Shown in pieces: positions 11,314 through 32,687 of a stretch of 64,000 bases of DNA. The position numbers were made by a program, and so were the translations under genes. Positions within the stretch are counted from its first letter, which is position 1, and every line of letters starts with the position of its first letter. The stretch lies in contig NC_086385.1 of NCBI RefSeq assembly GCF_036588685.1, forward strand, positions 45,717,216-45,781,215, written 5' to 3'. Source of the stretch: Mytilus trossulus (taxonomy: Eukaryota). A model generated the notes under the pieces. That model made no database searches, was not told the origin of the DNA, and was given only the letters and a program-made list of their open reading frames with translations.

Positions 11314-11771
11314 GGAATATACTGATAGGGTTATGATAAACTTTACCAGACGACAGCCATGACACTTCTTCAATGAGTAGATTCCTCCGATATCAGAGCA
11401 CCTGTGTCATACGTTATGAATTCATGACAAATCGCCACACTGTCAAATCGCCCCACACTTAAGTCCTGAAAAAAATCAAGTCCTATACAGTATAATACGG
11501 TTTACCTGTGTGTTTCCTTTAAACAATCAATATCTGAAGACCTTCACATGTCTAAAAACACACATCAATTTCATTGGTTGGCTTTTTTAAATCACGTATT
11601 GACCTTTTTAAAATCTGATAAAATAGTCATTTCCATCAAAAGTGTTTAATCAAAGAGAGGTAACTCAAGTTTATTTTGTTTGCCCACATGTAACTCGATT
11701 CAAGCCCTTTCCGTGTCCGATTTTCTCCCACACGCTCTAACATGTGGGCTAACCCGAATAATTCAGTCGTT

Positions 11772-14700: not shown

Positions 14701-16705
14701 AGTCAACAACACTAGAACCATTATATTTTATACAAGTATATTTACCAAGAAGATCGCCAATTGTTCTACCATTCAAAATTCGTAGCCCATCTTCTTTACA
14801 GAGCTCTATTAATAATTTGCAACTCTTTTTTGGCCTTTTATGATCAAGACTATTTCTTGGTGTACCTATATCATATACATAGCTATCATCCTCAGCATGA
14901 GGATAGATAGATTCATCAGAGTATACAAAGTCTGGTGTTGTGCTAGTGTAGGCATTAAAATCGCCTTGAATCAATACTTCACCATATTGACTATAGTTTT
15001 CTATATTACAGAGTAATTTTGAATACATTTCTTCAATATCTTTTGGTTGCCCAGAAGAATTTTCTGGGGAAAAATAGATAAAAGCAAGATATATATCTTT
15101 TGGAAGATTAAAAAACTTATGGTTTAGCTTTACCCACTGGATATCACTATGTTCATTTGGAAGCTTAGTCAAACCTTTGATCAAAGAAAGTTTGGCATAT
15201 ATTGCAATTCCACCAGAATTACGCCTTGCTTTTTATGTTTAGATCGACTACTGTTGCAAATAAGTGCATAATCTGGTATATTCAAAGTAGTTCCACTGTC
15301 ACTCCATGTTTCAATTAAATTAAATAGATGCATATTAGATATAATATTCAAAAAAGCAGGGTCCTTAATTTTGTCTTGATTTAAGCCCTGGATATTCCAT
15401 AAACCAATTTTCAGGTTATTCGTGGTCATTGTTAAAGAATCAATGATGGTAAGATGACGGGAAGTTTTGTAATAAATTGGATTTCTTAAGGCATGATTGC
15501 ATGTGTTTAGATGTTGGTTTGGTTATATGTAAAGGATCTAAATGAAGATATTAAATACCTTAATGAATGTCCTATGGTATAGGTACCTTTTAATAATAGT
15601 ATAAGAAAAAAAAAAAAAAAAAAAAAAAAGTTAACAATTTACTTTAAAGGTGCATTAAGAAGTCAATTATTGACTTTTTTGGTGTAAAGAGGGATAACTC
15701 TAATTCATAAGTAAGCTTGAATAAAAAGATTGATAAAAAGATTGATAAAAAGATACATAAAAATAAAATGAAGATATAATAACTGTTGATGATGCACAGG
15801 TAATGACTAGAATCAATGTACACAGGATATATGTAAATGATATCAAGATACATAATGGTACAAATATAATGTTATATTGATATGAAACACAATTCATATT
15901 TTCAATGTAAAATGAATAACAACCAAAAAATAATAATAAACAAAGTAAAAAAAAACCAAACCAATATACAAAAAAAATAAAATAATACAGTACTGACAGT
16001 TAACAATGAGAATCAGAATGGTTCATTAATAAAGAAAATATTTATTAGAAGTCCATTCTCTGCCTAGCTGATGGCATGTTCCAAGGTCCAAAAAGCCAAG
16101 GGTTGAAGTATGGCATGTTCAAGTTGAAGGGTGGACAAGGTGGATTTCCTAACGGTTGTTGGTATTGATTATTGTTATAATTTGGGTTTTCAATTGGTGG
16201 TTGTTATTGACTATTTCCGAGCGATTGTTGGTATTGACTATTGTTATAATTTGGGTTTTCCTTTGGTGGTTTGTATTGACTTTTTCCAAGCGATTGTTGG
16301 TATTGACTATTGTTATAATTTGGGTTTTCAATTGGTGGTTGGTATTGACCATTGTTATTGTATGGATTCCTCAGTAGTGGTTGGCCTGTATTATTGTTAT
16401 AGTATGGATTTCTGTGCGGCGGTGAGTATTGATTGTTGTTATTAATGTCAGCCTTGTTTTGTCTGTAGTTCTTTGTTTCGCCGTGATACACACTAGGTTT
16501 GTTACTAGTCCTTGGTGGTGTGTTAGCTTGCGTGAATGGGATCTTCATCTGGCGCTTCAAAAATTTCACAATTGCAGGTATACCTCTGCTGTCATTGAGG
16601 TGTACATAGTCGAAGAACATATCGTCTGTGGGTATAAAACCTTTGAGTATGTTGAAAGATGGATAGTCATGAGCTACGGATATTATCCTGTCGTTTGCTT
16701 CATCA
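11772..16705 (-). mobile_element. Non-LTR retrotransposon (RTE-X/CR1-group-like), copy 1, truncated in ORF1
   Basis: APE endonuclease motifs (WNIQGL, ETW, GDFNA, SVVDY, SDH), RT motifs (FVDLRKAFDTV, GVKQ, FADD), C-terminal CCHC-type region, TAAGA/TGATA microsatellite tail at ~11772. Confidence 0.92.
11960..15429 (-). pseudogene. LINE ORF2 (endonuclease + reverse transcriptase), frameshifted, copy 1
   Basis: Split across ORFs 15181-15429, 13571-15184, 12943-13590, 12893-13078 and 12232-12903 in different frames; 3' end approximate. Confidence 0.9.
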
Positions 16706-16979
16706 GTCAGAGCTCTGACATAAACAAGTCAGAATAAACTGACTTCTATAAGTCAGATATAATTTGATGTAAGTGTTATCTCCCTTCTTGCACTTAACAG
16801 AATATGACTTGTACGGGTCAGTTTTTGTCAGACTTTAGTTTATCATAAAATGACTTAAGCAGGTCAGCTTTTGCACATTAAAATGTGACTTTATATCTCA
16901 ATATTTTAACAAGATTTATGCCCCTTTTAGATGCATTTTGACCTACAGAAGTCAATTTTGTTCTGACTTGAAGCAGTCA
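16706..16979. promoter_or_regulatory. Subterminal array of TGAC-N8-GTCA palindromes (putative transposase/accessory-protein binding sites) after a 14-bp terminal palindrome
   Basis: GTCAGAGCTCTGAC at 16706-16719; perfect TGAC-N8-GTCA at 16716, 16740, 16805, 16851, 16939, 16964. Confidence 0.75.
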
Positions 16980-17734
16980 ATACTACAACTTTAAAAATAT
17001 ACATTTATATATTAAATAAACCGTGATTTCTTGTATATTCACCATTTGTTTACTGAATATTGTAAAATAAATAAAGAAACAAACAAACAAACAACAGTTA
17101 AGAATAAAATGTTTATTCACTGACAAGAAATAACTGTACATTTAAAAACATGTAAATGAATATAAAAACATGTAAATGAATCTAAAAAAAATACATTTAA
17201 TTATAACCATATCTGTTAAAAGTTTTTGTATAAAAGAATGTGTAAAGTAAGTGTAACAACAGCTGTGCCAAAAGTGTACTTTAAATTATTTGATTACCAG
17301 TATTTAGGAACATGTTTCTTTTGTCTTAAATATGTGATACTTAAAAATACAAAGCAAAATTAAAAAGTAAAAACACAAAAATACTGAACTCCGAGAAATA
17401 ACAAATACTCGGAGAAGGTGGCTCGGGACCGAACAATAAACACTATATATAACAACCTAATTATCCATAACATTTGTACAATCTTATCAACAAACATCCT
17501 TACGTAAATTATAAAATGGTTATGCACTTATGTTAAATGTTTTGGTACCTTAATACATATTGATAGATTATTATTTCTATTATGTAACTGAATGTATATA
17601 AGCAGTTATCAAACACAATTTCATAAAAAGGTGTATTTTTGTTAAAAAATGAATTTAGTGTGGTATATTCTATATTTGAAAATAGCATTCACATAGTTAG
17701 GAAATCCATTAAACATACATTTACATCATCACAT

Positions 17735-19735
17735 AGTGAACAAAGAAAAATAAAACATTATTGGCAGTGAGTTATAAAGTCATATCAATAAGCACTTTTT
17801 TTAAAATGTTTCTGCACCCAACTTGGCAGTGTAATTTTACAGTACCTTATCTTGACACTATTACAAAATAAGGCAAAAGTAACTGAACCCTACTTGGCAG
17901 AGTTTGAGGTCATCTTATTTAGCACTGTGCCCATCTTGGCTTTCATCATAGATATTTTAAATCACAAAAGTTGCATATAAATTTGGTGACAGTCTTTTGG
18001 GGTATTGTACAACATGTTGAAGAGTGAACAAAGAAAAATAAAACATTATTGGCAGTGAGTTATAAAGTCATATCAATAAGCACTTTTTTAAAAATGTTTC
18101 TGCACCCAACTTGGCAGTGTAATTTTACAGTACCTTATCTTGACACTATTACAAAATAAGGCAAAAGTAACTGAACCTTACTTGGCAGAGTTTGAGGTCA
18201 TCTTATTTAGCACTGTACCCATCTTGGCTTTCATCATAGATATTTTTAAATCACAAAAGTTGCATATAAATTGGGTGACAGTCTTTTGGGGTATTGTACA
18301 ACATGTTGAAGAGTGAACAAAGAAAAATAAAACATTATTGGCAGTGAGTTATAAAGTCATATCAATAAGCACTTTTTTTAAAATGTTTCTGCACCCAACT
18401 TGGCAGTGTAATTTTACAGTACCTTATCTTGACACTATTACAAAATAAGGCAAAAGTAACTGAACCCTACTTGGCAGAGTTTGAGGTCATCTTATTTAGC
18501 ACTGTGCCCATCTTGGCTTTCATCATAGATATTTTAAATCACAAAAGTTGCATATAAATTTGGTGACAGTCTTTTGGGGTATTGTACAACATGTTGAAGA
18601 GTGAACAAAGAAAAATAAAACATTATTGGCAGTGAGTTATAAAGTCATATCAATAAGCACTTTTTTAAAAATGTTTCTGCACCCAACTTGGCAGTGTAAT
18701 TTTACAGTACCTTATCTTGACACTATTACAAAATAAGGCAAAAGTAACTGAACCCTACTTGGCAGAGTTTGAGGTCATCTTATTTAGCACTGTACCCATC
18801 TTGGCTTTCATCATAGATATTTTTAAATCACAAAAGTTGCATATAAATTGGGTGACAGTCTTTTGGGGTATTGTACAACATGTTGAAGAGTGAACAAAGA
18901 AAAATAAAACATTATTGGCAGTGAGTTATAAAGTCATATCAATAAGCACTTTTTTAAAAATGTTTCTGCACCCAACTTGGCAGTGTAATTTTACAGTACC
19001 TTATCTTGACACTATTACAAAATAAGGCAAAAGTAACTGAACCCTACTTGGCAGAGTTTGAGGTCATCTTATTTAGCACTGTACCCATCTTGGCTTTCAT
19101 CATAGATATTTTTAAATCACAAAAGTTGCATATAAATTGGGTGACAGTCTTTTGGGGTATTGTACAACATGTTGAAGAGTGAACAAAGAAAAATAAAACA
19201 TTATTGGCAGTGAGTTATAAAGTCATATCAATAAGCACTTTTTTAAAAATGTTTCTGCACCCAACTTGGCAGTGTAATTTTACAGTACCTTATCTTGACA
19301 CTATTACAAAATAAGGCAAAAGTAACTGAACCCTACTTGGCAGAGTTTGAGGTCATCTTATTTAGCACTGTACCCATCTTGGCTTTCATCATAGATATTT
19401 TTAAATCACAAAAGTTGCATATAAATTGGGTGACAGTCTTTTGGGGTATTGTACAACATGTTGAAGAGTGAACAAAGAAAAATAAAACATTATTGGCAGT
19501 GAGTTATAAAGTCATATCAATAAGCACTTTTTTAAAAATGTTTCTGCACCCAACTTGGCAGTGTAATTTTACAGTACCTTATCTTGACACTATTACAAAA
19601 TAAGGCAAAAGTAACTGAACCCTACTTGGCAGAGTTTGAGGTCATCTTATTTAGCACTGTACCCATCTTGGCTTTCATCATAGATATTTTTAAATCACAA
19701 AAGTTGCATATAAATTGGGTGAAAGTCTTTTGGGG
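17735..19735. repeat. Tandem satellite, 288/289-bp unit, ~6.9 copies
   Basis: Unit start agtgaacaaagaaaaataaaacattattggcag at 17735, 18023, 18312, 18600, 18889, 19178, 19467; units nearly identical. Confidence 0.98.
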
Positions 19736-19807
19736 GACTGAGGGACTGACAGACAGACAAATGTACAACGGTACACCATAATAGGTCCCCTTTTAAAAAA
19801 AACAAGC

Positions 19808-21122
19808 TTTTTCAAAAACAAAACTATAAAAAGCACCAATAAAGACTAGATCCAACTCTTTAAAACTTAACATATACATGATATATACAAAAACTAACAT
19901 ATTTACAAACAAAACAAAAACATTTAATTTGACTTGTCAAATATAGAAATGCATATTTGAAGGTGGAGGTATGGCAAGGTCATAAAAAAAAATATTCATT
20001 TCATTGTCATTACAACATAGAAAACACCTATGAAATTGACGAATAAAACCAAAACTACACATGTTTAGAACATGATAGTTTACCAAAACAACTTTACCAC
20101 AAAAATATCTATATTGTTATGGTTTTGGCTCTTAAATATCAAAGACACTATTTCTTAAGATCAACTAATTTTTTTTTTTAATAACCTCTATTTCAAAAAG
20201 TTTCAAGACGGACACCTTCCTATTCCTTCTTTACCAAACAAAAAACAAAAAAAGCATAATAACTTTGAAAAATACGAAAGATGCATTTTTTTTATTTTGA
20301 TAATTCCTGTTCCTTTTTTCAAATTAAAGAGTTAAAAAAGCCACATCATCATACCTTCTCCTTCCCAAAAACTAAACATAATATCAGAGTCAGAATACGA
20401 CATCTCATCACATTCAAAACACAAACTAAAACCAGAGGAGAAAAAAATTGATCATACATTTTTCAAAAACAAAACTATAAAAAGCACCAATAAAGACTAG
20501 ATCCAACTCTTTAAAACTTAACATATACATGATATATACAAAAAGTAACATATATACAAACAAAACAAAAACATTTAATTTGACTTGTCAAATATAGAAA
20601 TCCATATTTGAAGGTGGAGGTATGGCAAGGTCCTTCATTTATCAATGATATTACTTTTTCTATATACTTTATCTAGACACTATAAATTAAATAAAAATAT
20701 TCATTTCATTGTAATTATGACATAGAAAACACCTATGAAATTGACGAATAAAACCCAAACTACATATGTTTAGAACATAATATTTTACGAAAACAACTTT
20801 ACAACAAAATATCTACCGGTATATTGTTATGGTTTTGGCTCTTAAATATCAAAGACACTATTTCTTAAGATCAACTAATTTGGTTGTCTTTTTTTTTTAA
20901 TAAACTCTATTTCAAAAAGTTTCAAGACGGACACCTTCCTATTCTTTCTTAACCCAAAAAAAACAAGAAAGGGTATATAACTTTGAAAAATACGAAAGAT
21001 GTATTTTTTTTATTTTGATAATTCCTGTTCCTTTTTTCAAATTAAAGAGTTAAAAAAGCCACATCATCATACCTTCTCCTTCCCAAAAACTAAACATAAT
21101 ATCAGAGTCAGAATACGACATC
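19808..21122. repeat. Tandem duplication of ~650 bp
   Basis: ttttcaaaaacaaaactataaaaagcacc...gatcatacattttt at ~19808 and ~20460, with several indels. Confidence 0.92.
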
Positions 21123-21837
21123 TCATCACATTCAAAACACAAACTAAAACCAGAGGAGAAAAAAATTGATCATACATTTTTCTAAATATCAAAAGATAAA
21201 AAAAATCTTATGAAAATTTGGCACATATGCTAGCACCATGACAATACTTCACATCTTCCCAGGAAAAATAATGCACTCATTCAGACTAAGGCTATAATAA
21301 AAAAAAATCATTCTCATCCTGTTTTAGCCAAGTTTATAGTAAAACATTGGTTAGTTTTAATATCAATTTCATTTTCAGAATGAATCACACTTGGAAATTA
21401 ACAAAATAAAAAAAACAATAACTTTAAATGTCTCTTTAAAAATATAAGAAAAATAAAGGATTTTTTTCATTATAGCCTCAATTAATTCTAAGATTATAAA
21501 ATAAACATGATATATAAAGTAAGACATTTATAAAACATGTGAAAAGTAACTAGTAACCACTTTGTGATCAGTTCTGTAATTAAAACACTGTCAATTACTT
21601 CAATATGTTCAACTTGACCTAAAAATGACCTTGACCTTAAGGACAAACTTCCCAACCAAGAATCCACCCCACATAGAGCCTCAGGAAAAGTTGCACAACA
21701 TTCGATTACACTAGGTTTTGAAAAGAGATCTTAATTTCTTAATGTAATTTTGAATAAGTTATAATGAATAATTAATAAAATATTTGTCCAAATATAAAAT
21801 CATTTTTAATTTTCAGTCAGAATTATGAGTCACAAAT

Positions 21838-21979
21838 TGACCTCAACAAGTCTGTCATATTTTGACTTTGACAAGTCAGTATTGTACACATATTTTTTTC
21901 ATAATACACTATATGATGAGAAAATGTGTTTACAATATGGACTTGTCAGAGTCAGAATATGACCGACTTATTGAGGTCA
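21838..21979. promoter_or_regulatory. Internal cluster of TGAC-N8-GTCA-type palindromes
   Basis: Sites at 21838 (GTCT end), 21863 (perfect), 21939 (GGAC start), 21964 (CGAC start); two pairs each 25 bp apart. Confidence 0.6.
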
Positions 21980-22154
21980 ATTTGTGTTAAATAAAACTTG
22001 ATGAGGAAACTTAATTTTTCAGTTAATTATCACCTGAACTGTGACTGATAATCTTAAGTACATTTAAAAAAAAACATTTTCTTACTGGTATGTTTTATTC
22101 CGAGAGCCAGAAGGATGCAAATTTAAATGGAAATATTCAAATAAAAAATATAAG

Positions 22155-25100
22155 TTATTGAAAGTATTTTTTACAGTAATTTTCATATTTTTGAAGAACC
22201 TGTTCAAAATTGTTTATGCTCCAGACTCTTCCTGAAGAGTCTCGAGCATAAATGTCAATATCAGTTTCGAATATAAATTTTTGGTCAACTGTGTCTTGAT
22301 CTTCCTTTGAAGGCCACTTGAATGAATTTTTTGAGCTGGACTGCTCCATGCAGTTAACTTGACACATCAGACCGTCCTTTCCAATGATCTGTCCCAGAAA
22401 CATTTTGTCTGAATAAGCAACACCAACATATTGTCCAACCATATTTTTTTCACCATTATCTGAAAATTTAAAATGTAGTGTAAAGGAGTATGTTCGATAA
22501 GGTCCTAAAATGGCCCCCATTTTAAGGGTAAATTTCAAATTCTGATTTATCGACCAATATCATGATAAATTATAGCTAATACATTGACTAGCTAGGATAT
22601 AAACAATTTTGTTGAAAATTTTACGTTTCTGCGTTCATTATTACGTCACAAGTTTCATGTTTCTTATGTAGATGATGTGATTCTTGAGTTCCTAAATGAA
22701 AGTCTGGTGTCTTTTATATTTTCTTATAGTATTTTTTAAAAGAAAAGTATTTCATTGGCAGTTAAAATTTTGAAATCTTTTGTAATTTATTAATTTTACC
22801 TTCATTTTCTTCTGTCTTGTTTCCTTCTGTCTTTTTTTCTTCTACGCTAAAGGTCAAAAGACCTTCTGAATTATTCACCTGAAACAAAGGAAGAAGTTTA
22901 AAAAAATGAACACTGAAAAGCTATCATTTAATACACTTTCCAAAAAATAATTTTAACTTTGCTGGTCATGCTGGTAGGATAAATGAAAAATTTATATGAT
23001 TGTCATTCAACTTCAATGGACATTTGTCTCATTGGCAATGGCTCCAACATTACTTTTTCATATATTTAAAGAGGAAAAATATTCAATTTCATCTCCATTT
23101 TTATTAAATATTAAACAAAAGTTTCATAGGCCTTACCTGGAAAAGTAAAAGATCTTGTATCATTGGATCTGCCATCTCTTCTAAAAGTTGCTCTGTTTGA
23201 GAGACAGATAACAGGCTAAAAAAAATAAAAAATATATAATTGTTTAGTAGTTATCTCCTGCTTATTTCACATCTAGTATATGTAAACAAGTTTTCCATGA
23301 AATCTTGAGTCAAATTCGTAAAATATAACAAAACAAAATGTTGTCAAGAGACTCTTATTTGGCATTAAAATAAAAAGATCATATCATAGGGAACCATTGT
23401 ACTAAGTTTCAGGTAGACTGGACTTTAACTTAATTAAAAAACTACCTTGACCAAAAATTTAATCCAAAGCAGGATGGACGGACGGATGCACAGAAGCACA
23501 AACCAAAAGACATAATGCCCCTATCCAATTAAAAGTAGGGTATAAAAAAGGTTGTGATAGGACAGTTAATTGAAAAATGTACAATCTTCTTTAAAGGCAC
23601 AATTTTTTTTATGACTACGTTTGATTTCAATAATTTTGTATTTGCAGCCATATGGTAGGTATAAATAAAAATATCAATACTTGAGCACTAATCCAAAATA
23701 TATTTTGATTACAAACCTTTCCTTCTGGCTCTCTTCCTCACTGTCTTCTACACTGAAAAATTAAAATTTGCATAATTACTTTTTGAGGGGGCAGATGGTT
23801 TTTTTTTGTCCTTCTTGATCTTGGAATTTTGCTTACTGTGCTTTGTTATTTCATGGATTTATTGTCCATGAATTATGAAAAGTGCATTTACCCTGACACA
23901 TTTTTATTTCATTTTTATAATCGTCTCTTTGATTAAGGCTTTAAATTGTTGTTTTCCTGTGAACAGTGATGAATGTGTTAAAGTATCAGACTATATAAAC
24001 ATTCCTTACAATACTTTTAATATTAAGAACAATAAATAATTGGTAATTGCATTCTTGTTAAAAATTCAATCTGTCTCTCTCTTACCCATGGCATGTGAAG
24101 TTTATGTTATTTGCTAGAAACCAGTCAAAATTTCTGAAGGAGTATTTATTTATCATGGCAAAAATATAATGTCTTGCAAGACTTTTGTAGACGTGATAGA
24201 TTTTCTATTAATTCTTGGTTATTTTCAATTCAAAAGCATATACTTACATCTCCGAGGTATGAGAACAGGTTTTCTGCTTTTTTGTCACTGGCTCATCATC
24301 CTCATCACTCTGTTCATCAAACAAGTCAGACATCTTTTTTCTTTTCTGAGGGAGATTTGATGTTGTTTCTCTACCTCTACCTCTACCTCTAATGGCTGAT
24401 GACTTTCCTCTACCCTTTCCTTTACCTCTTACCCCTCCTCTGGCATGTCCGGTGATCTGATTACTAAAGAAAATTACCAAAATGATTGAAGGGTGTTAAT
24501 AGATAAGTGATTTTTACATTTTAACTTGTTAAACAAGTAGAAACCACAAATAAATGATGTTTCGATTAAAACAATAGTTTAAAATTACTGTAAATATAAA
24601 ATAGAAGATGTAGTGTGATTGTCCACAAAAGACCAAAATGACACAGACATAAACAACTGTAGATCACTGTAAGGCCTTCAACAATGAGCAAACCCTTTCT
24701 TTTTTTGAAGAAAAGTAATAAGAATAAATACGCTGCTGTAAATTGCCAGCAATTAAGTGTGCTGCTACATTTTTAAAACTCCTTGAAATTTATCTGTTAA
24801 AAGTTGTTTCATCGTTTGTATTGTATACCTTCTATCTTTTCTTGACTCGGCATACAGAGCCCTCTTTGCTGATCTTATATCAAAATTGCTGCTACTTGGG
24901 TCATAGCTGGTGCTTGGTCTGTTGGTGTTGCTTGATTCATCATGTTCATTGCTGGTACTTGGTCTGTTAGTGTTGCTGGGTTCATTGCTGGTACTTGGTC
25001 TGTTAGTGTTGCTGGGTTCACTGCTGGTGCCTGGTCTGTTGGTGTTACATGTGGATGTTGATGGTAGTCTGAAATAAGATGCACTGTTTATTAACAAAAG

Positions 25101-28100
25101 GGCATCACAATTTAAGTTTATAAAGGTCATTCGCATTTAGACTGGTCAAAATATAACTGTAAAAATACAAATAAAATGATACACATCCAGTGTGGAATTC
25201 TTAAATTGCTAACATGAGTATATTAATCATGTGTACATTGTTAATTAACAATTCAAACCATACCACAGCATTTTGCATAGATGTTAATGTAAAGCATTCA
25301 TTTCATATTAACGTTTAAAGTAACAATCATACTTTGGTGTTTTTTTGTTGTTTTGAACCTGGGGGTTTCACAATACCAGTTCCCATTCTTAATCTATTTA
25401 TATTAATAAAGTTAAATGTGGATATTACAACTTACACATTCACATCTGCTGGTGTCACATTAATCTCCATTTGCTCCAGCATTTCTTTCTGCTCCCTGGC
25501 CAAATTTCTCCCGCTGCCGACACCAAAGTTGAAAGGATCTTTCTCTGGTGTCAGCAGAATGACTTCTTGGTCCGGGGTCACCTCAGGCATAGTTGGCAGC
25601 TTCTTCCTATGGCTGTATGGTAGTTTGTCTGTAATGGGGAGGCCTTCCGAAAAACGTTTAATCATTTCCCCATATCCAAATGCTTTAATTACTTTACTCC
25701 CCTTCCTCCTAATGAGGAAGAGGGTATCAACGGGCTCATATACCTGTTCTCTTTCCAATTTGGTTGCAAATTTTTGTAAATTTTTGACAATTCTGCTTTT
25801 TGACTTTTGTAAGGCGTTAATTTTACAGTTTCTCTCCTGGTACTTGTTGTCATAATTTCTTTTCTCCCCTGGTTTTAGTTTCTCCTCTCTACTCTCTTCC
25901 TCCTCTCTACTCTCTATAACTGAAAAAAAAGTAAATATAAACAATTGAAATTACAAACTTACAAACATATACTGTAAAATCTAGGAATGAGGTTTAAGGA
26001 CTTACAATAATTTCAAAAAGAAAAAAAAACACATTTTTTTAATTCTGTTTGTTTATTTTATGTTATAGGTTAGTCATTTAAGGTGTTACCCAACACTGTC
26101 AGTAAAATTAAAATTTGACAAAGTATTTTCTTTGACCCTTTAACAAAAATTTCCAAATTTTGGTTATATTGCAGTTTGACAAACATCAATTTTGTTCATT
26201 TAAAAGCTTAATATTCCATTAAAACAACTTAATTAACGCATTTAGCTGACTTTACAGAGTTATCTCACTGTAGTGTTAGGTACCACCTTAAGGGATATGA
26301 CATGCACAGAGTAGAGTTAATTATATATTTGCATGCATTGGTGTTGATGAAAAATTGATTTTATGATTTTTGTTCATAAATTCAGATCAATTCAATCTTA
26401 TAATTCTGAGAGCTCAAATTGTATGCATACATGTACATGCTGTATGTATGTTAATAGTGGATGATTCAAATCAAATTCAAAGTCAGGTCTCTCCTCTCAA
26501 ACATATTAATTAATAGCAATATATTTAATCCTGAAGATCATAATAAATAAATTATAAATGTCTAGTAGAATAATTATTAACTTCATATCTCATTTCTCGT
26601 ATCTCATTTCTGTTTAACAGATGGTCTTATTTGTTCCATGAATTTCAATAGTTAAAAATATCCAGAATTCGATTTTACCTTGCTTTTATGGAAAATCTGC
26701 ATCTTCTTTCCATTATTATAATGGAAAGAAGGATCATCAGGCATATTAGTGCAATGCTGATTGCCACAAAACACATAAATTCCATGCTCATGCTTTCATC
26801 TATAATAAAACATTATAATAAATAATCTTAATAATTAGACATTGATGGCAATATATAAAATAAATTCATACAATGGTAAAATTTTAAAAGAATGTTTTTT
26901 TCACCACAAGTAAAATTTAAACCAGGCTTATAATTTATATTATGGCAGACGGGCACTATAAAAGACTCATCTGATAAAAGATACATGTAAATTCAATCAG
27001 TTACTGTATGTGACCTGATTAAACACCTCCTCCCTTATAAATCAACATTTCATTTTTATAGTTAAAGCTAGAAATAAAGAATCTTTGATTCATTTTACCA
27101 AACGTGTGCATATATTTTTTTCTGCCAAAAATTGTTTTAGTTTATTGTGAAATCTATAAAAAGACTCTGAAAGAACAAAAGTTAGAAAGTTAAAATTTAG
27201 CTTATACTCATAAAAAGGCTGAATTGAAAACTAGTAACACACAAACATAAAATAATGAACATCACATGCAATTGCATAACTTAACATGCTTAAGGGAACA
27301 TAACAATATATAATTTTCATTCTGACTTCCAAGGATTTTTTTTTTTAACTCAAACAAGTCAAATCTATCTATAAAGTATGACTTTATACCTTAACCCTTT
27401 CCTCGTGAATGATGCCTTTTGATGCCTTTGTAGTACCTCAGTTAAACCACTTTGACTATGAAATGTCTGCGTAAATTTTATATCCAATATGAAAAGGATA
27501 TTCATAAGAATATCTGACTTACATTTATTTGATGAAATTTTTGTTTTTCGCAATGCATTAATACTTTAAAGCATATTTTCAGTATCTTATTGAAAAATCC
27601 TAGGCAAATCAAGAATGCAAAAAGAAACGCATTGAGGAAAGGGTTAACATGCATAGATATTAATTTGTGTATATATATAACACATGTATCATGCACATAT
27701 ATACATAAGGTGTCAGCCCTGTATAACAAATGGTTATCAAATGTCACGCTGAAGCATCTGACAACTTTTTCACATGTTTAGATGTGTATAATGCATAAAG
27801 AGAATGCCTGTCATAAATTTTTAATGAGACCTTCCCTGAGATAACCATTGGTAATACAGGATTAATGCATATTATTCAGAACATACAATATATATAGTAT
27901 TTAATGGTACAAAACATGCTAAATTATAAATACTGGCAAACATGTATATAGATAAACTGACATACATGAGAATCATACATACATTTTGTAGATGAAAATG
28001 TATACATTTCTTGAGATATAACATGCATTAATAAAATCAAACATGCCTCCAAACATTTATCATTTTGTTTATCATTACTATATAATACAAGTATCCACAA

Positions 28101-31100
28101 ACAAGAGTCAGACATATTGAAAGCATAGAACCAAACATGCAATTTTTTCTAAATATACCTCTAAAAATGAAAATTAATCTCATTGTGTCTCATTGTCTTT
28201 ATTCAGATTTTCTAACACATCAGTAAGCTCCCTCAAGAAATGAACAAGTTTGGCCTTTCCCTTTGTTTTAACCTCCTTCTGATACAATTGTTTGTGGTAA
28301 TCAAATTGAAAAGGATCTTCAATCTTGTCCAAACATTTTTCAATCTCATACTGGAGTTGTTTGTTAGTCATGTTACTTGTGCTAAATAGCTTCTCTCGCT
28401 CTGACGGAGTAACTGGGACAGGATGACGGAAGTTGTAATGGTCTGTCTGAATTGGATGTCCTAAAAATTCTGTTTTCATAAGGTGAATTCTTTTTCGTAC
28501 TGATAGTTTTAAAAAATCCACTAGTCCTTCATCAAGAGCCATCCCTGAAATAGATACATGGTCACCTTTTTTCCCTAAGTAATCAGTTTTCCTGAGTAAG
28601 ATCCTATATGCAATTATACCATTTTCGATTCCCAGAGAACGACTGTTACCTTTATCAGATTTAATGTTAAAGGTTGACAAAGAATGGTCTTTGATGGTTT
28701 CTAGCAGCTTGTTATTACGGCAAACAGTTAACCAAATTTTGTCTGTAGGTACACCTTTGGGGATCCATGACTTCAACTGCTTGTTCTTTTCTTCTAAAAT
28801 GAAGTCGAAATCTTCACCCAGGGACTTATTTCCACTTGTTGTGATTGATGAATATTTGTCACTTAAACTTCTTACTTCTTCTGGCATCATAAGGTCTTGA
28901 ATGGTGTCAAAAATTTCTATAACTTGATATTTGGGATGTGATCTTCCATGAAACAGTTCTTTTGTCATGTATTTGGCACTCTTAAGGAGGTCAGAATTGT
29001 TTCTTCTTGTTGCCATTCTAAAATTTATTATACCTTGGGAAAATCTGCATACCTGGTCCATCATATATGTAAAATTTGAGTTTGATGGAACCCCATACTT
29101 CTCAGTGCTGTATTTCAGGAAACCTTTTGCAGTCGGGTGAACCTTTGACAACATACAGAGTCGAACAAATGGTAAAACCAACTCCTGTAATGTTCCCAGG
29201 TGAAAGATTAGTAGTAATCTCCATGTTTTGTGGTGATCTTTGCATGCCTTTGCAAATTGTTTGGCAGCATCAGACTCAAATCCCATTAGTTGACATAAGT
29301 GTTCCAAGGCAGGTGTCCAGTTTAATTCAAAGAAAGATTTCATAAGATTCATTTCATAGTGACCAGACCCTATCCTCAGATATAACCAATCAAATTCTAG
29401 CATGAATTTTCTCTCCATTTGGGGATGAAATTCCTTTGCATGACTATTATAAAGATCTGTTGACAAAAATGACTTTGCACACCCTTCAATGGCACAAACA
29501 ACAGCTTCCTCTTTCAATTTCTTTATGATAAGGTATGGTAACCCATCACAGCATACAAATGTCCAGTGGCGCTGGTTGCCACCATATCTGACAATGCCAT
29601 TTTCTTCCCCAATCTTTCTTAAAACTCTTGCAACAGTTATCATGCTGTTTGGGTTACAGAATACAGGATCACTAATAATAATTTCATGTCTTCCATCATG
29701 GTTAGACTTAACATGGTTGAATTGGGTGAACTCGCTATGCACCTCTGTGATCTCTGACTTATCGTCATTTTCATCTTCCTCAAAAATAATTAGGTAGCAG
29801 GTGTCTTGGTCTTTTACAAATGAGTCATTGGTACAATCTTTCTTTTTATTCTTGGCTGATTTCAATCCATCTTTTCTACTGCAACTTGTACAAATTAGTT
29901 TGCGCTTACCATTCAATGCTCCACAGTGTTCACATTTAATATAGTTTTCATCCTGCACATCCTTTTTAACCTGATCATCAATAAAATCTTCAAAATTTCT
30001 CTCAGTTTGCTTCTGCTCCTTCGACACAGTGTCAATGGCATGGTCAATAAAATAGTACAACTGTTCGTAATGATCTGTTTCCATTTTTGAATATCTTTCT
30101 GTGTCCTGATCAATCATTTCATTGATAAGAGATTGAAGTTTTGAAGTTTGTGTAGTATCATTCTCATTGACATTTTCAGCTATATCATCTTTTTCCATCT
30201 TGGGTAACTGTAACTTTTTTTCAGGTTTCAAGTCTGCTTTAGTTTGTAAACTTTCAGGAGATTGCAATTCCATAAAGGCTTTGTTAGTAATTATGGATAT
30301 TGCAATTTTGTTTTTTGGCTTTATTGACCATGTTTTTCCTATTACTTGTTCGTTGTCAAACACATTCATCAGATCACATGAAGGTAATTCTGCGGGGTGG
30401 CTACTTTGCTCCTTAACCCAATTAGTGACAGTCTTGTAATGACCTGCTGGATTGGTATTTCCAAGTAAATCCACAACTAACCTGCTCCCAGTTAATGTAT
30501 ATGCAGTTAGATTCAGCAAAAAAGAAAGAGGTGAAATTAAACTTCTATTGCATACACTGTAAGATTGTTCTACTGCTCTACAAATTGGCAAGATGTCACC
30601 CGGTCTTTCTTTCAGCTTATGGAGAGAGATGTCAAGGTTACCAAGTCCCATTATGTAACCTATTAAGGGTTCATATCTGTTGTGGATCCATTTTAAAACA
30701 TCAAAATTTGCCACGGCATGGGGGTCCTTGTAAACATTTGAAAAGTTACTTGAATCCTCAGATATAGGTTTATGCTGCTTTTCCCAATACAGTTGCATAA
30801 CAGAGATTCTTCTTTCAGAGATAAAATGTTCAAAAATTCATTAAAAAAAACCTGTTTTTGGTTATCTTCCATCTTTAACAATGCATCTTTCATGTATTCT
30901 ATCAAACTGTTTAACTGTGAATATTCAGTAGCTAAGGGTGTAGTACTTTTTTGACTTTGGTCGTCCTCAAAGTTACTTTTAAATTCAGTATTCATGGGTG
31001 GGTATGTACTCTGAGAAGCATCATCATCATCATTGGTCCTCTTTCTCTTTTTAGGCCTCCCCCGAACTTGATCAGTTTTAGAGCACACTTCACAACCTAT

Positions 31101-32146
31101 GGTATGAGGTGGGAAATAAACCTTTGGCTTGGTCAATTTCAGTTCATTGGAGTTTGACAAGCTCTCCCCTTTTGTTTCCCTATATCTATATAATAACCTT
31201 GAGTGCCTAAGGCAAACAAATGGAGGGTATGTTTCGTCATTTTCCTCTTTAACATCAATTCCGTATATGGCAATTATTTCGGAAGCGTAAAGAACTTTTT
31301 GGTACTTTTTCTTAGAATCTCTAATAAATTCATTACAAAGGCGACATACAGTTTGTAGCTTTGATATGTGTTCCCGGCAATCAGAGATTTCACTCATGAT
31401 GAAGTAAGTTGTAACATTTATGATCTTTTCGATTGTATCAAGAGGAGGATAAAAACAAAAGAAAGCAAGGTTTTAACCATCAGCTTTTCTCTGAAAATAA
31501 AGGCCATGAAACTTGTACATGTGTTCATTTGGTGTACAAATTATGTAGCTACAATATATAATCTCAAGGCATACTTGTTTGCTAGTTGGGTATAAGAAAA
31601 AAAAATTGAACCAGACAATATGCAATGAAGTACATCATAGAGATCAGCTCAATTGCTGAACATCAATGAATTCTACAATAATATATCCTTGAGTCTTGCC
31701 ATTAAAAATGATCAAAAATTAAATCCTTTAAAAAGATCATAGAGAACATGTTTACTAAGTTTGAAGTTTATTGGACTTCATAAAGACAACCTTGACCAAA
31801 ATTTAACCCAATACAGGAACAGATGAAAGAATGAACTAACTGAGAGGTGGGTGCATTGACTGCAAAACTTAATAAAAAGCTAATGCAATTAAAATACATA
31901 CATGACAGCTGATACATGATTCTTAATTACAATCTTAAATGTCATAAGACAAATCAATTAACCAGAACAAGTCCTAATTTTTTTACTTAGTCAAAAGTTA
32001 GAATAAATAATTTGACTTGATCTTTCAAAATTCTTTAAATACTATTGATGATCAGTGATTGAGAACAATAACCATATATCACTATAAACTGAAAAATGAA
32101 CTTTTCACTTACCATGTTGATCGTCACTACTGCTGTTTCCAGACAT
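22155..32146 (-). CDS. 8-exon accessory gene, 490 aa: basic N-terminal region, Ser/Thr/Asn repeat, RG-rich tract, acidic linker, C-terminal Tudor/SH3-like barrel
   Basis: Exons 32146-32113, 25919-25436, 25068-24829, 24463-24248, 23752-23717, 23215-23137, 22878-22800, 22459-22155. All introns GT-AG; phases 1,2,2,2,2,0,1 all match; 1473 nt with no internal stop (MSGNSSSDDQHVIESREEE...YENYCKKYFQ). AATAAA at 22094-22099 (minus strand). The short first exon is the least certain. Confidence 0.82.
24900..25048 (-). repeat. Coding minisatellite, 36-bp unit (NTNRPSTSNEPS) x~4
   Basis: Repeated peptide in ORF 24765-25136, within exon 3 of the accessory gene. Confidence 0.85.
28180..30798 (-). CDS. Putative DDE transposase core (Academ/DUF6589-like), 872-aa ORF
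   Basis: Intronless ORF. Motif order VFDNEQ ... VCCDGLPY ... IGSGHYEMN ... GEDFDFILEEKNK, plus a CxxC-x11-CxxC ribbon and a C2H2-like finger (CAIEGC...H...H). Family recalled from motif pattern, not searched. Confidence 0.7.
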   Translation of the reverse strand: MQLYWEKQHKPISEDSSNFSNVYKDPHAVANFDVLKWIHNRYEPLIGYIMGLGNLDISLHKLKERPGDILPICRAVEQSYSVCNRSLISPLSFLLNLTAYTLTGSRLVVDLLGNTNPAGHYKTVTNWVKEQSSHPAELPSCDLMNVFDNEQVIGKTWSIKPKNKIAISIITNKAFMELQSPESLQTKADLKPEKKLQLPKMEKDDIAENVNENDTTQTSKLQSLINEMIDQDTERYSKMETDHYEQLYYFIDHAIDTVSKEQKQTERNFEDFIDDQVKKDVQDENYIKCEHCGALNGKRKLICTSCSRKDGLKSAKNKKKDCTNDSFVKDQDTCYLIIFEEDENDDKSEITEVHSEFTQFNHVKSNHDGRHEIIISDPVFCNPNSMITVARVLRKIGEENGIVRYGGNQRHWTFVCCDGLPYLIIKKLKEEAVVCAIEGCAKSFLSTDLYNSHAKEFHPQMERKFMLEFDWLYLRIGSGHYEMNLMKSFFELNWTPALEHLCQLMGFESDAAKQFAKACKDHHKTWRLLLIFHLGTLQELVLPFVRLCMLSKVHPTAKGFLKYSTEKYGVPSNSNFTYMMDQVCRFSQGIINFRMATRRNNSDLLKSAKYMTKELFHGRSHPKYQVIEIFDTIQDLMMPEEVRSLSDKYSSITTSGNKSLGEDFDFILEEKNKQLKSWIPKGVPTDKIWLTVCRNNKLLETIKDHSLSTFNIKSDKGNSRSLGIENGIIAYRILLRKTDYLGKKGDHVSISGMALDEGLVDFLKLSVRKRIHLMKTEFLGHPIQTDHYNFRHPVPVTPSEREKLFSTSNMTNKQLQYEIEKCLDKIEDPFQFDYHKQLYQKEVKTKGKAKLVHFLRELTDVLENLNKDNETQ
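30693..31397 (-). CDS. N-terminal part of the same transposase: RAG1 N-terminal/Chapaev-like Zn-binding domain plus AT-hook/NLS
   Basis: H-x7-CRLC...YGIDV...YPPFVCLRH...FPPHTIGCEVC...RGRPKKRKR parallels RAG1 CRIC...FRIDV...HPTEFCHNC...WHPHTPSCDIC. Overlaps the 872-aa ORF; one added A in the run at 30779-30782 fuses them. Confidence 0.75.
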   Translation of the reverse strand: MSEISDCREHISKLQTVCRLCNEFIRDSKKKYQKVLYASEIIAIYGIDVKEENDETYPPFVCLRHSRLLYRYRETKGESLSNSNELKLTKPKVYFPPHTIGCEVCSKTDQVRGRPKKRKRTNDDDDASQSTYPPMNTEFKSNFEDDQSQKSTTPLATEYSQLNSLIEYMKDALLKMEDNQKQVFFNEFLNILSLKEESLLCNCIGKSSINLYLRIQVTFQMFTRTPMPWQILMF

Positions 32147-32504
32147 GTTTGATTTTTCTGAGAAAAAAAATGAGAGAAATTGTAACATATAAATAAATAA
32201 CCATTCGACTTAAAATTATTTATAAAAAAAATGTTAAATATAAAAAAACAATGGCAGATTCAGAAAAAAAGGGGGGTCTTAGTGGAAGATTTAGATCTGT
32301 ATTTCTTGACTTTTCTTTTCTTCTAAGTACACATAAATATTATGGTTTAAAAAAAATATTTTAGCAACCATTTGACCCAATTTTTTCTCAATACATTTGT
32401 TTGTACTTCTAAAATGATCAACTACAAAATGTAGCAGTGGCAGATTCTGAAAGGGGCTTCCAAAGAAGAAAAATAGATTTTATTTGAAACTTTGTTCTGC
32501 AAAC

Positions 32505-32546
32505 TGACTTAAACAAGTCAAATCATGTTCTGACTTTACAAAGTCA
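32505..32546. promoter_or_regulatory. Pair of TGAC-N8-GTCA palindromes near the right breakpoint, upstream of both genes
   Basis: TGACttaaacaaGTCA at 32505 and TGACtttacaaaGTCA at 32531. Confidence 0.65.
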
Positions 32547-32687
32547 GTAATTAACTAAATTTATTGAGATGGTCAGGCATTGTAAAATGATATTAATGAA
32601 TGTATTGAAAAGGTTATTTTAAGACACCGGAAATACATGTAAGATCCTGTAAAAATAAATAACCATTTGACTTTAAATTATTTATAA

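What the first reader, a model, noticed from the sequence alone, without database searches (positions are those of the whole stretch)
28180..31397. RAG1-N-terminal-like Zn finger fused to a non-RAG, Academ/DUF6589-like transposase core
Seen: H-x7-CRLC...GIDV...YPxxVCxxH...PHxxxCxVC then RGRPKK, followed by a core with DN, CDG.PY, G.GH.EMN and D..LE..N motifs and two further Zn fingers. Known: this N-terminal Cys/His module is shared by RAG1, Chapaev transposases and the molluscan N-RAG-TP. Inference: the module moves between transposase superfamilies, which bears on how RAG1 acquired its non-core region. Predicted catalytic triad: D of VFDN, D of CCDG, E of ILEE.
Basis: partly seen in the sequence, partly recalled or inferred. 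Interest (0 to 1): 0.85.

Follow-up and report, generated by a model that had tools for sequence, protein, structure and literature searches.

The report
RAG1-type zinc domain on DUF6589 transposase
A mussel DNA transposon gene joins the two-zinc N-terminal domain known from the immune recombinase RAG1 to a catalytic core that is not RAG1-like, so this module has been shared between different kinds of transposase, though a mollusc element of this sort (N-RAG-TP) was reported in 2008.

Summary
On the minus strand, 31397-28180 encodes a transposase of about 1072 aa. This assembly splits it into two ORFs by one missing base in a T-run (30779-30782). A second genomic copy and four public runs carry the extra base.

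- **N-terminus:** residues 1-110 are a RAG1 N-terminal zinc domain (NZD/Chapa). Pfam PF12560 scores above its cut-off, the family profile matches RAG1 at E 1.5e-11, and all eight zinc ligands are present.
- **Core:** it is an RNase H-fold DDE transposase related to Pfam DUF6589. D148, D418 and E669 are conserved at the canonical positions.
- **Nearest solved folds:** these are P element, Hermes and ISCth4 transposases (Z 8.4-9.8). The RAG1 core scores only Z 5.4 and shows no sequence similarity.
- **Element:** the gene lies in a 16-kb element that keeps only its left inverted repeat. About 30 non-coding 7.1-kb relatives share that end and have 5-bp target-site duplications in 9 of 9 copies checked.
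- **Activity:** the gene is transcribed as a spliced mRNA. The genome holds at least 20 intact paralogues.

The "Academ" label is not supported. Chapaev membership could not be excluded, because no reference sequences were available. The scan already found this architecture on other DNA of this genome. It is moderately interesting.

The parts
31068..31397 (-). N-terminal RAG1-type two-zinc domain (NZD/Chapa), residues 1-110. Inferred ligands are H10, C18, C21, C62, H65, H98, C102 and C105.
   Evidence: PF12560 at E 1.3e-7, above its cut-off. Profile match to RAG1 101-269 and 21WB at E 1.5e-11 with the ligands aligned. C62, H98, C102 and C105 are invariant. AF2 pLDDT is about 90 for residues 10-75.
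31038..31064 (-). Basic RGRPKKRKR stretch (AT-hook-like GRP core, probable nuclear localisation signal).
   Evidence: Seen directly in the sequence. GRPKKRK is the consensus in homologues. Its function is inferred.
30779..30782 (.). T-run (A-run on the coding strand) that is one base short in this assembly. It splits the gene into ORF1 (31397-30693) and ORF2 (30798-28180).
   Evidence: Alignment to homologues. Five T in the C1 copy. One extra T in contigs of 4 of 4 public runs (table 4).
28180..30798 (-). ORF2, 872 aa: helical region, DDE catalytic core and C-terminal helical region of the transposase. The stop codon TGA is at 28180-28182.
   Evidence: AF2 model with pLDDT 85.8 and pTM 0.83.
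28675..30384 (-). RNase H-like catalytic domain (ORF2 residues about 139-708). It carries a helical and zinc-ribbon insert between strands 2 and 3, and an all-alpha insertion domain (about 505-660) before the helix that holds the catalytic E.
   Evidence: VIA-align: P element transposase Z 9.6-9.8, retroviral integrase cores Z 8-9 spanning 139-708, Hermes 8.5, ISCth4 8.4, RAG1 5.4.
30355..30357 (-). D148 (VFDN), proposed first catalytic Asp.
   Evidence: Invariant. Lies in strand 142-153 of the model.
29545..29547 (-). D418 (CCDG), proposed second catalytic Asp.
   Evidence: The only column invariant in 51-56 distant homologues. Directly follows strand 413-417.
28792..28794 (-). E669 (ILEE), proposed catalytic Glu.
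   Evidence: Invariant and at least 90% conserved in distant homologues. Lies in helix 664-676 after the insertion domain.
29881..29934 (-). CxxC-x10-CxxC zinc ribbon (C289, C292, C303, C306) inside the catalytic domain.
   Evidence: Invariant cysteines. Weak zinc-ribbon Pfam hits in relatives.
29425..29496 (-). C2H2 finger (C435, C440, H453, H458), starting 17 residues after the second Asp.
   Evidence: Invariant C435, C440 and H453. Hairpin plus helix in the model.
28159..31490 (-). Main exon of the transposase mRNA. It holds the whole coding region.
   Evidence: A 4119-nt contig of run X8 covers 28159-31491 colinearly and continues on other sequence at both ends. CAG acceptor before 31490 and GT donor after 28159.
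32113..32215 (-). Upstream exon 1 (only 102 nt of its extent were seen). Its ATG at 32146 opens a short upstream ORF once spliced to 31490.
   Evidence: The loose end of the X8 contig maps to 32114-32143. GTAAGT donor.
26780..26799 (-). Start of a downstream 3'-UTR exon joined to 28159. The intron is 28158-26800.
   Evidence: Half of the X8 loose end maps to 26785-26799. TATAG acceptor. Only partly matched.
16704..16759 (+). Left terminal inverted repeat of the element. It starts CAGTCAGAGCTCTGAC.
   Evidence: Shared with at least 30 genomic elements, 96% over the 56-bp repeat and 90% over 289 bp. Occurs once in the window.
16716..16979 (.). Six TGAC-N8-GTCA palindromes at the left end, with pairs 24-25 bp apart. 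These are candidate transposase binding sites.
   Evidence: 9 sites in the window against 0.78 expected, all inside the element. Binding is inferred.
32505..32546 (.). Two TGAC-N8-GTCA palindromes 26 bp apart near the right end.
   Evidence: The region 32180-32690 resembles internal repeats of the non-coding relatives.
16704..32687 (-). The 16-kb element that carries the gene. It has a left inverted repeat and no right one, and it is bracketed by a duplicated LINE.
   Evidence: Self-comparison. Second copy at C1, 99.6-99.8% identical over window 16717-31316.

Best explanation
This is the transposase gene of a large cut-and-paste DNA transposon of a Mytilus-type mussel.

**Domain order of the roughly 1072-aa protein**
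1. A RAG1-type two-zinc N-terminal domain (NZD/Chapa).
2. A basic GRPKKRKR stretch.
3. A helical region.
4. A DDE catalytic domain of the RNase H fold, related to Pfam DUF6589. It carries an inserted zinc ribbon, a C2H2 finger and an all-alpha insertion domain.

**Shown**
- The domain identities and the conservation of D148, D418 and E669 at the canonical positions of the fold.
- A spliced transcript.
- At least 20 intact paralogues in the genome.
- Elements sharing this element's terminal repeat are flanked by 5-bp target-site duplications.

**Inferred**
- The protein binds the TGAC-N8-GTCA palindromes clustered at the element ends.
- It excises the element by DDE chemistry and reinserts it with a 5-bp staggered cut.
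- It also mobilises the non-coding 7.1-kb relatives.
- The NZD serves in DNA, chromatin or partner binding rather than catalysis.

**Lineage**
The core belongs to a lineage distinct from Transib/RAG1. The NZD is confined to part of that lineage. The module has therefore been gained or lost independently of the core.

**This copy**
The copy in the window is itself immobile. It lacks the right terminal repeat, and in this assembly it is one base short in a T-run.
For: **N-terminal domain**
- PF12560 scores 32 bits against a 23.3 cut-off.
- The family profile matches RAG1 101-269 and 21WB at E 1.5e-11 to 2e-11.
- The ligand columns are invariant.
- The protein atlas places the N-terminus with PF12560 clusters at 0.94.

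**Core**
- The AF2 model has pLDDT 85.8.
- The top structural matches are all DDE transposases or integrases: P element Z 9.8 with 355 aligned, Hermes 8.5, ISCth4 8.4, integrase cores 8-9, RAG1 5.4.
- DUF6589 is hit by 9 of 25 and by 26 of 51 relatives.
- The atlas neighbours are DUF6589 clusters.
- There is no RAG1-core sequence match at E up to 10.

**Family size**
- 5273 clusters at 50% identity match at E up to 1e-3.
- The genome has at least 20 full-length open frames of 990-1142 aa.
- All 14 PF12560 loci of the genome lie on this core.
- The RAG1 core family PF12940 has no match in the genome.

**Mobility**
- 9 of 9 elements with this terminal repeat have 5-bp duplications.
- The palindromes are enriched, 9 against 0.78 expected.

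**Expression and intactness**
- A spliced contig and the extra base are seen in 4 of 4 runs.

**NZD distribution**
- One clade of 44 rows has 40 with the NZD.
- Sea-urchin and Gigaspora relatives lack it.
Against: - The link between this transposase and the 5-bp-duplication elements rests on one shared 289-bp end and similar subterminal repeats. No copy with the gene and both terminal repeats was recovered.
- The structural Z scores of 8-10 are in the range the tool calls middling.
- No Chapaev, Academ or N-RAG-TP sequence could be compared. 'Distinct lineage' is therefore argued indirectly.
[quoted passage not shown] All of this fits Chapaev.
- The tree is a quick, unrooted search. Some rows scored as lacking the NZD may be truncated gene models.
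Confidence: 0.62

Rival explanations
1. It is an ordinary member of the Chapaev group (CACTA-Mirage-Chapaev, related to Transib), the transposons already known to carry the Chapa domain. It may be identical in kind to the Aplysia elements Chapaev-1 to 3_ACa or to N-RAG-TP. In that case nothing about domain exchange is new.
For: - The Chapa/NZD domain is the hallmark of Chapaev (PMC4411706; preprint 10.64898/2026.01.24.700457).
- The termini are 5'-CA...TG-3'. The 5-bp duplication lies within the 2-5 bp range of the clade. [quoted passage not shown]
- Repbase Chapaevs exist in a mollusc, Aplysia.
- Family members occur in amphioxus, where Chapaev was first described.
Against: - The profile shows no similarity to the RAG1 core at E up to 10.
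- No CACTA-type Pfam family is hit in 51 relatives at E up to 1.
- RAG1 is the only solved member of that clade. It is a clearly worse structural match (Z 5.4) than P element, hAT or IS256-type transposases.
- The C and H pairs form one local C2H2 finger. In RAG1 they bridge the insertion domain.
- CMC elements are described with 2-4 bp duplications (preprint 10.64898/2026.08.26.747230).
Confidence: 0.25
2. The core belongs to the Academ superfamily, as the first reader and earlier notes of this scan wrote.
For: - Academ is reported as abundant and expanded in bivalves, with long elements (PMC10294476).
- Academ has no Pfam family of its own that I know of, so an unnamed DUF could hide it.
- Relatives occur in animals and fungi, as AcademH does.
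Against: - Duplications are 5 bp here, against 3-4 bp (AcademX) or 9-10 bp (AcademH) (PMC10045372).
- No XPG nuclease is encoded. XPG_I has only 4 loci in the whole genome and none is in the element, while DUF6589 has at least 103 loci.
- The roughly 49 curated bivalve Academ consensus sequences held as text contain none of 11 DNA words coding the family's HYEMN and FDNEQ motifs, while a control word was found.
Confidence: 0.1
3. It is a domesticated host gene rather than a transposon gene.
For: - The frame is intact in other copies and runs.
- The mRNA is spliced.
- The sequence is present in runs of several organisms and 12 studies.
Against: - There are many near-identical paralogues at unrelated loci.
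- The gene lies between transposon-type ends.
- A second truncated copy at 99.6-99.8% identity sits on another chromosome-size contig.
- The family shows patchy copy numbers typical of mobile DNA.
Confidence: 0.03

Closest known systems
N-RAG-TP transposon of Aplysia californica (Panchin and Moroz 2008)
   Same: It is a mollusc mobile element whose protein resembles the N-terminal, non-core part of RAG1, as described by citing papers PMC8355894 and PMC8374863.
   Different: The accessible literature describes no DDE core type, terminal repeats or duplication length for it.
Chapaev / Chapaev3 transposases (CMC group)
   Same: They have an N-terminal Chapa domain homologous to the RAG1 NZD. The zinc-ligand pattern is type I, with one N-terminal and three C-terminal ligands for the second zinc. 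Termini are CA...TG.
   Different: - This core shows no detectable similarity to RAG1/Transib.
- It is structurally nearer to P element, hAT and IS256-type enzymes.
- It has no RING finger.
- Duplications are 5 bp, not 2-4 bp.
- No direct sequence comparison was possible.
RAG1 / RAG1-like N-terminal zinc domain (NZD, PDB 21WB)
   Same: The sequence profile matches at E about 1e-11 with all eight ligands aligned. It shares the motifs H-x3-L-x3-C-R-x-C and P-H-x3-C-x2-C noted by Kapitonov and Jurka 2005. A basic stretch follows the domain.
   Different: There is no RING/ZnF-A region, no nonamer-binding domain and no RAG1 core. It lacks the vertebrate-specific helix H2 region (inferred from its length). 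No RAG2-like partner was seen.
Pfam DUF6589 (PF20231)
   Same: The relatives' region from the second Asp to the catalytic Glu matches it. The atlas neighbours are DUF6589 clusters, commonest in molluscs.
   Different: This protein itself does not reach E 1 against the model. The Pfam entry carries no function. Here the domain is shown to be the C-terminal two thirds of a DDE transposase core.
P element (THAP9) and hAT (Hermes) transposases
   Same: These are the best solved structural matches over 270-360 residues. They share the RNase H fold with a large alpha-helical insertion domain before the catalytic Glu. The terminal repeat starts CAG as in many hAT elements, and 5-bp duplications are known for the hAT5 group.
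   Different: - There is no sequence-level match to any hAT or P Pfam family.
- There is no hAT C-terminal dimerisation domain, THAP or BED finger.
- There is an extra helical and zinc-ribbon insert between strands 2 and 3.
Academ superfamily
   Same: Both are long bivalve-rich DDE transposons with transposases of about 1000 aa.
   Different: The duplication length differs. There is no XPG nuclease. The indirect word test against curated bivalve Academ sequences was negative.

Membership tests
RAG1 N-terminal zinc domain (NZD/Chapa; Pfam PF12560 region) | Significant profile match to the RAG1 N-terminal region | tested here: met
   PF12560 scores 32 bits against a 23.3 cut-off. The family profile matches RAG1 101-269 and 21WB at E 1.5e-11. 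17 of 25 homologues hit PF12560.
RAG1 N-terminal zinc domain (NZD/Chapa; Pfam PF12560 region) | Eight zinc ligands for two interleaved sites (H...CxxC...CxxC/H...HxxxCxxC) | tested here: met
   H10, C18, C21, C62, H65, H98, C102 and C105 are present. They align to the RAG1 ligand positions. C62, H98, C102 and C105 are invariant.
RAG1 N-terminal zinc domain (NZD/Chapa; Pfam PF12560 region) | NZD fold (helices H1, H3, H4 around two zincs) | tested here: inconclusive
   The AF2 model has helices 2-14, 34-45 and 63-75 at pLDDT about 90. Foldseek finds only ZAD domains (E 0.05), as the NZD preprint reports for the first zinc module. 21WB did not appear in the Foldseek results.
DDE transposase of the RNase H fold | RNase H-like catalytic fold | tested here: met
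   The top structural matches are all DDE transposases or integrases spanning residues 139-708.
DDE transposase of the RNase H fold | Three conserved acidic residues on strand 1, after strand 4, and on the following helix, meeting in space | tested here: inconclusive
   Conservation and secondary-structure positions fit.
DDE transposase of the RNase H fold | Terminal inverted repeats and target-site duplications | tested here: inconclusive
   Non-coding relatives have 56-bp repeats and 5-bp duplications in 9 of 9 copies. This copy has only the left repeat.
Pfam DUF6589 | Match above the gathering score | tested here: not met
   The window protein has no hit at E up to 1. Relatives hit at up to 6.7e-11, so it is a divergent relative, not a scored member.
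Transib / RAG1 core | Sequence similarity of the core to RAG1 or Transib | tested here: not met
   The profile against PDB sequences matches RAG1 only at 101-269, with nothing in the core at E up to 10. PF12940 is never hit.
Transib / RAG1 core | RAG1 as the closest solved structure | tested here: not met
   RAG1 scores Z 5.4 against 9.8 for the P element transposase.
Transib / RAG1 core | 5-bp target-site duplications | tested here: met
   9 of 9 related elements have them.
Chapaev (CMC) | N-terminal Chapa domain | tested here: met
Chapaev (CMC) | [quoted passage not shown] | tested here: inconclusive
   C-x4-C here (C-x2-C in most relatives) plus H-x4-H are present. They form one compact C2H2 finger, unlike the arrangement known from RAG1.
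Chapaev (CMC) | 2-4 bp target-site duplications | tested here: not met
   The duplication is 5 bp. The range is taken from preprint 10.64898/2026.08.26.747230.
Chapaev (CMC) | Sequence relation of the core to Repbase Chapaev transposases | not testable with these tools
   No Chapaev protein sequence was available. Only a tree file was found.
Academ | 3-4 bp (AcademX) or 9-10 bp (AcademH) target-site duplications | tested here: not met
   The duplication is 5 bp. The lengths are taken from PMC10045372.
Academ | Element encodes an XPG nuclease (AcademX) | tested here: not met
   PF00867 has 4 loci in the genome and none is in or near the element. The long ORFs of the element have no such hit. 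A helicase (AcademH) was not searched for by family.
Academ | Sequence relation to Academ transposases | not testable with these tools
   The only check was an indirect word test on a curated bivalve library, which was negative.
N-RAG-TP | Sequence identity or similarity to the Aplysia N-RAG-TP protein | not testable with these tools
   The paper (PMC2719772) is not held. No Aplysia protein appeared among the named hits.

The most novel reading that the evidence does not exclude
The RAG1 N-terminal zinc domain is a module that has been exchanged between at least three unrelated DDE transposase lineages: Transib/RAG-like, Chapaev, and this DUF6589-type lineage with 5-bp duplications. The DUF6589-type lineage is widespread in molluscs, annelids and amphioxus and is still active in mussels. 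It is then a candidate donor, or sister of the donor, of RAG1's non-core region. It also offers a living system in which to ask what the domain does for a transposase.
Probability: 0.35. Interest if true: 0.75.

Novelty: new variant of a known kind. Interest (0 to 1): 0.55.

Why it matters
Two sources state that the Chapa/NZD domain occurs in no transposable elements other than RAG-like and Chapaev ones: Kapitonov and Koonin 2015, and a 2026 preprint that solved the NZD structure. Here a large family carries that domain on a core that looks unrelated to RAG1. The family is intact and transcribed.

If the core is confirmed as a separate lineage, three things follow:
- The origin of RAG1's non-core region becomes a question of module exchange among transposons, which can be tested by phylogeny of the domain against phylogeny of the cores.
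- Pfam DUF6589 gets a function, as the catalytic core of a cut-and-paste transposase.
- Mussels would provide an active element for bench tests of what the NZD does.

If the core proves to be Chapaev or N-RAG-TP, the finding is a well-annotated new member of a known group.

Tried and rejected
**Searches that gave nothing**
- Foldseek of the whole 872-aa model against the PDB found nothing at E up to 0.001. VIA-align was needed.
- Foldseek of the N-terminal model found only ZAD domains.
- Searching the RAG1 core family in the mussel genome found nothing. This left no reference sequence for a profile-profile test.
- A second word-indexed protein search with the alignment reached no new taxa.

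**Papers not held**
- The Panchin and Moroz paper, Kojima's AcademH paper, and Yuan and Wessler 2011.

**Attempts to find a complete autonomous element**
- The non-coding elements with both terminal repeats, including a 16.1-kb and a 10.3-kb copy, contain no transposase. tblastn was empty, and the 16.1-kb copy is only an expanded tandem array.
- The paralogue on C1, C14 and C11 shares more than 15 kb of homology that runs beyond the fetched DNA.

**Readings considered and rejected**
- The two ORFs are two genes, or are joined by an intron. The overlap is a 1-nt shift inside a homopolymer, and it is absent from other copies.
- The element's right end is a degenerate terminal repeat at 32546. 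No matching 5-bp duplication is present, and homology to family-internal repeats runs on to 32690.

**Not used**
- Complex prediction. No protein-protein binding claim is made.

Full report
**What is there**

The window is AT-rich animal DNA. It lies on a chromosome-size contig of a 1.30-Gb assembly. The best protein hits are from Mytilus species, so I take it for a mussel.

The minus strand holds two overlapping ORFs, 31397-30693 (234 aa) and 30798-28180 (872 aa).

Full-length homologues of 1000-1130 aa align with ORF1 up to ...CIGK206 and with ORF2 from (K)QHKPISEDSS. The two ORFs are therefore one gene, broken by a 1-nt shift in the T-run 30779-30782.
- The second genomic copy has five T at this place and reads as one 1057-aa frame.
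- Contigs from four public runs of three coded organisms all carry one extra T after 30778.
- The break is private to this assembled copy, or it is a homopolymer error.
- I did not build a joined sequence. The two pieces were searched apart.

**N-terminal domain**

- ORF1 hits Pfam PF12560 (RAG1 importin-binding region) above the curated cut-off, 32 bits against 23.3.
- A profile of 25 homologues matches mouse RAG1 residues 101-269, and the 137-residue chain 21WB, at E 1.5e-11 to 2e-11. 21WB is the NMR structure of the RAG1 N-terminal zinc domain, NZD (preprint 10.64898/2026.01.24.700457).
- The alignment pairs H10, C18/C21, C62/H65 and H98/C102/C105 with the RAG1 ligands. C62, H98, C102 and C105 are invariant in the family.
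- This is the 'type I' pattern of that preprint: one N-terminal and three C-terminal ligands for the second zinc.
- The motifs H-x3-L-x3-C-R-x-C and P-H-x3-C-x2-C are those Kapitonov and Jurka noted in 2005 (PMC1131882).
- The AF2 model is confident for residues 10-75. Foldseek finds only ZAD domains, which is what the preprint reports for the first zinc module.
- The domain is therefore a RAG1-type NZD/Chapa domain, not merely a ZAD.
- It is followed by RGRPKKRKR.

**Core**

- ORF2 itself has no Pfam hit.
- 9 of 25 close homologues and 26 of 51 distant ones hit DUF6589. No known transposase family appears.
- The protein atlas puts ORF2 next to DUF6589 clusters.
- The AF2 model is good, with pLDDT 85.8 and pTM 0.83.
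- VIA-align against 48,161 chains gives only DDE enzymes at the top:

| Match | Z | Residues aligned |
|---|---|---|
| P element transposase | 9.6 | 358 |
| Retroviral integrase cores (spanning 139-708) | 8-9 | about 125 |
| Hermes | 8.5 | 278 |
| ISCth4 | 8.2 | 260 |

- Tn5 and Mos1 also appear in that list.
- In the second look, RAG1 reaches only Z 5.4 against 9.8 for the P element.
- The family profile finds no RAG1-core similarity at E up to 10.
- D148 lies in strand 142-153. D418 directly follows strand 413-417. E669 lies in helix 664-676 after an all-alpha insertion domain.
- D418 is the only fully invariant column in 51-56 distant relatives. D148 and E669 are at least 90% conserved.
- I could not measure distances in the model.
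- Two zinc modules sit inside the catalytic domain: a CxxC-x10-CxxC ribbon at 289-306 and a C2H2 finger at 435-458.

**Family**

- A profile search of 1.84 billion representatives finds 5273 clusters at E up to 1e-3 and 684 at E up to 1e-30.
- Named members come from bivalves, the annelid Owenia, amphioxus, the sea urchin Lytechinus and the fungus Gigaspora.
- In this genome at least 20 loci match the whole profile in open frames of 990-1142 aa. They fall into several subfamilies of 2-6 near-identical copies.
- All 14 PF12560 loci of the genome lie on this core.
- The RAG1 core family has no match in the genome.
- A quick maximum-likelihood tree of the core puts the window protein in a 44-row clade (SH-aLRT 98), of which 40 rows have the NZD.
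- The other side of the tree holds 20 rows without it, among them the sea urchin and Gigaspora, plus three amphioxus proteins that have it.
- The tree is unrooted and is not the careful search. It shows only that the domain is confined to part of the family.

**The element**

- Window 11610-16705 and 32688-37782 are 99.88% identical copies of a LINE.
- Between them lies a 16-kb unit, 16704-32687.
- A second copy on contig C1 matches window 16717-31316 at 99.6-99.8% and is cut at both ends.
- The unit starts with CAGTCAGAGCTCTGAC.... This end is shared with at least 30 non-coding elements of about 7.1 kb, 90% over 289 bp and 96% over the first 56 bp.
- Those elements have 56-bp terminal inverted repeats. 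In 9 of 9 copies examined they have 5-bp target-site duplications.
- The window unit has no right terminal repeat.
- Its right side (32180-32690) resembles the internal repeat units of the 7.1-kb family and stops inside them.
- TGAC-N8-GTCA occurs 9 times in the window against 0.78 expected. All nine are inside the unit and most are at its two ends, in pairs 24-26 bp apart.
- I read the unit as a damaged autonomous partner of the 7.1-kb family. The link rests on shared ends, not on a complete copy.

**Expression**

- The gene's words are held by runs of 12 studies.
- One 4119-nt contig (run X8) covers 28159-31491 colinearly. It continues at both ends on sequence that maps to 32114-32143 and, in part, to 26785-26799.
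- Both joins have GT-AG borders.
- This is a spliced mRNA with a leader exon, one coding exon, and a 3'-UTR intron starting 21 nt after the stop codon.
- The ATG at 32146 in the leader opens only a short upstream ORF in this splice form.

**Classification**

*Academ.* This label is not supported.
- Academ makes 3-4 or 9-10 bp duplications (PMC10045372).
- No XPG nuclease is present. XPG_I has 4 loci genome-wide and none here.
- The held part of a curated bivalve Academ library contains none of 11 DNA words coding the family's best motifs, although a control word is found.

*Transib/RAG1.* This is excluded by sequence and by structural ranking.

*Chapaev.* This is the serious rival.
- This family has a C-x2/4-C...H-x4-H finger 17 residues after D418, CA...TG termini and 5-bp duplications.
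- Against this, the finger is a compact C2H2 unit.
- No CACTA Pfam family is hit.
- RAG1 is the only solved member of that clade and is a poor structural match.
- No Chapaev, Academ or N-RAG-TP sequence was available, so membership stays open.

**Novelty**

- N-RAG-TP (Aplysia, 2008) already showed a mollusc transposon with a RAG1 N-terminal-like protein (PMC8355894, PMC8374863).
- Kapitonov and Koonin 2015 state that the Chapa domain is in no other known transposable elements (PMC4411706).
- The 2026 NZD preprint states that Chapaev is the only other lineage that retains it.
- A large, active family with this domain on a DUF6589-type core would revise both statements, if the core is indeed not Chapaev.
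- Earlier follow-ups of this scan reported the same architecture on two other pieces of this genome. This is therefore not its first sighting in the scan.

**Limits**

- Model coordinates could not be read.

Noticed in passing
window 11610-16705 and 32688-37782: Two 99.88% identical direct copies of a 5.1-kb LINE (endonuclease plus reverse transcriptase ORFs) bracket the 16-kb element. They include about 160 bp not found in other LINE copies. At the left junction the LINE 5' end abuts the first base of the terminal repeat, with a 2-bp CA overlap. The origin is unexplained. It could be a rearrangement, a one-ended event or a haplotype mis-assembly.
   Followed up: partly
window 22155-25944 (minus strand) and exon 1 at 32113-32146: ORFs of 170, 123, 78 and 127 aa on the same strand, downstream of the transposase, have no Pfam hit. 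They may be exons of a second element-encoded protein that shares the leader exon and its ATG, as another first-stage note proposed. Only the splice of exon 1 to the transposase exon was seen here.
   Followed up: partly
window 17735-19735: A tandem array of about seven 289-bp units (98-99% identical) lies inside the element. The copy number differs from that of the C1 copy.
   Followed up: no
window 21831-21986: An inverted repeat with 66-nt arms (88% complementary, 24-nt loop) inside the element contains the only internal TGAC-N8-GTCA site (21863).
   Followed up: no
G000:C1:28211939-28215133, about 17 kb from the C1 copy; also C14:69830902-69834096 and C11:4363130-4365205: A different family member has an intact 1087-aa frame and is 47% identical to the window protein. 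It is present in three copies at 99.8% identity. They share more than 15 kb of flanking homology, so it is another very large element or segmental duplication.
   Followed up: partly
L049-L055, C8 (L056+L057), C1 (L058+L059): The non-coding 7.1-kb family consists largely of internal tandem repeats bearing the palindrome motif. One copy is expanded to 16.1 kb by more repeat units, and another (10.3 kb) carries a nested insertion with ORFs of 336 and 208 aa.
   Followed up: partly
proteins P0029 and P0200: One homologue is deposited as a protein of a 'Candidatus Thiodiazotropha' metagenome-assembled genome, a bivalve symbiont. This is probably host DNA binned into the bacterial genome. Another is named 'RAG1 [Mytilus coruscus]', a misleading automatic name based on the N-terminal domain alone.
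   Followed up: no
G000 whole genome: Pfam DUF6589 has at least 103 loci in this genome, many in open frames of about 1000 aa and a few in frames of 1800-2170 aa. The wider family is a major and largely unannotated transposase group in this mussel.
   Followed up: no
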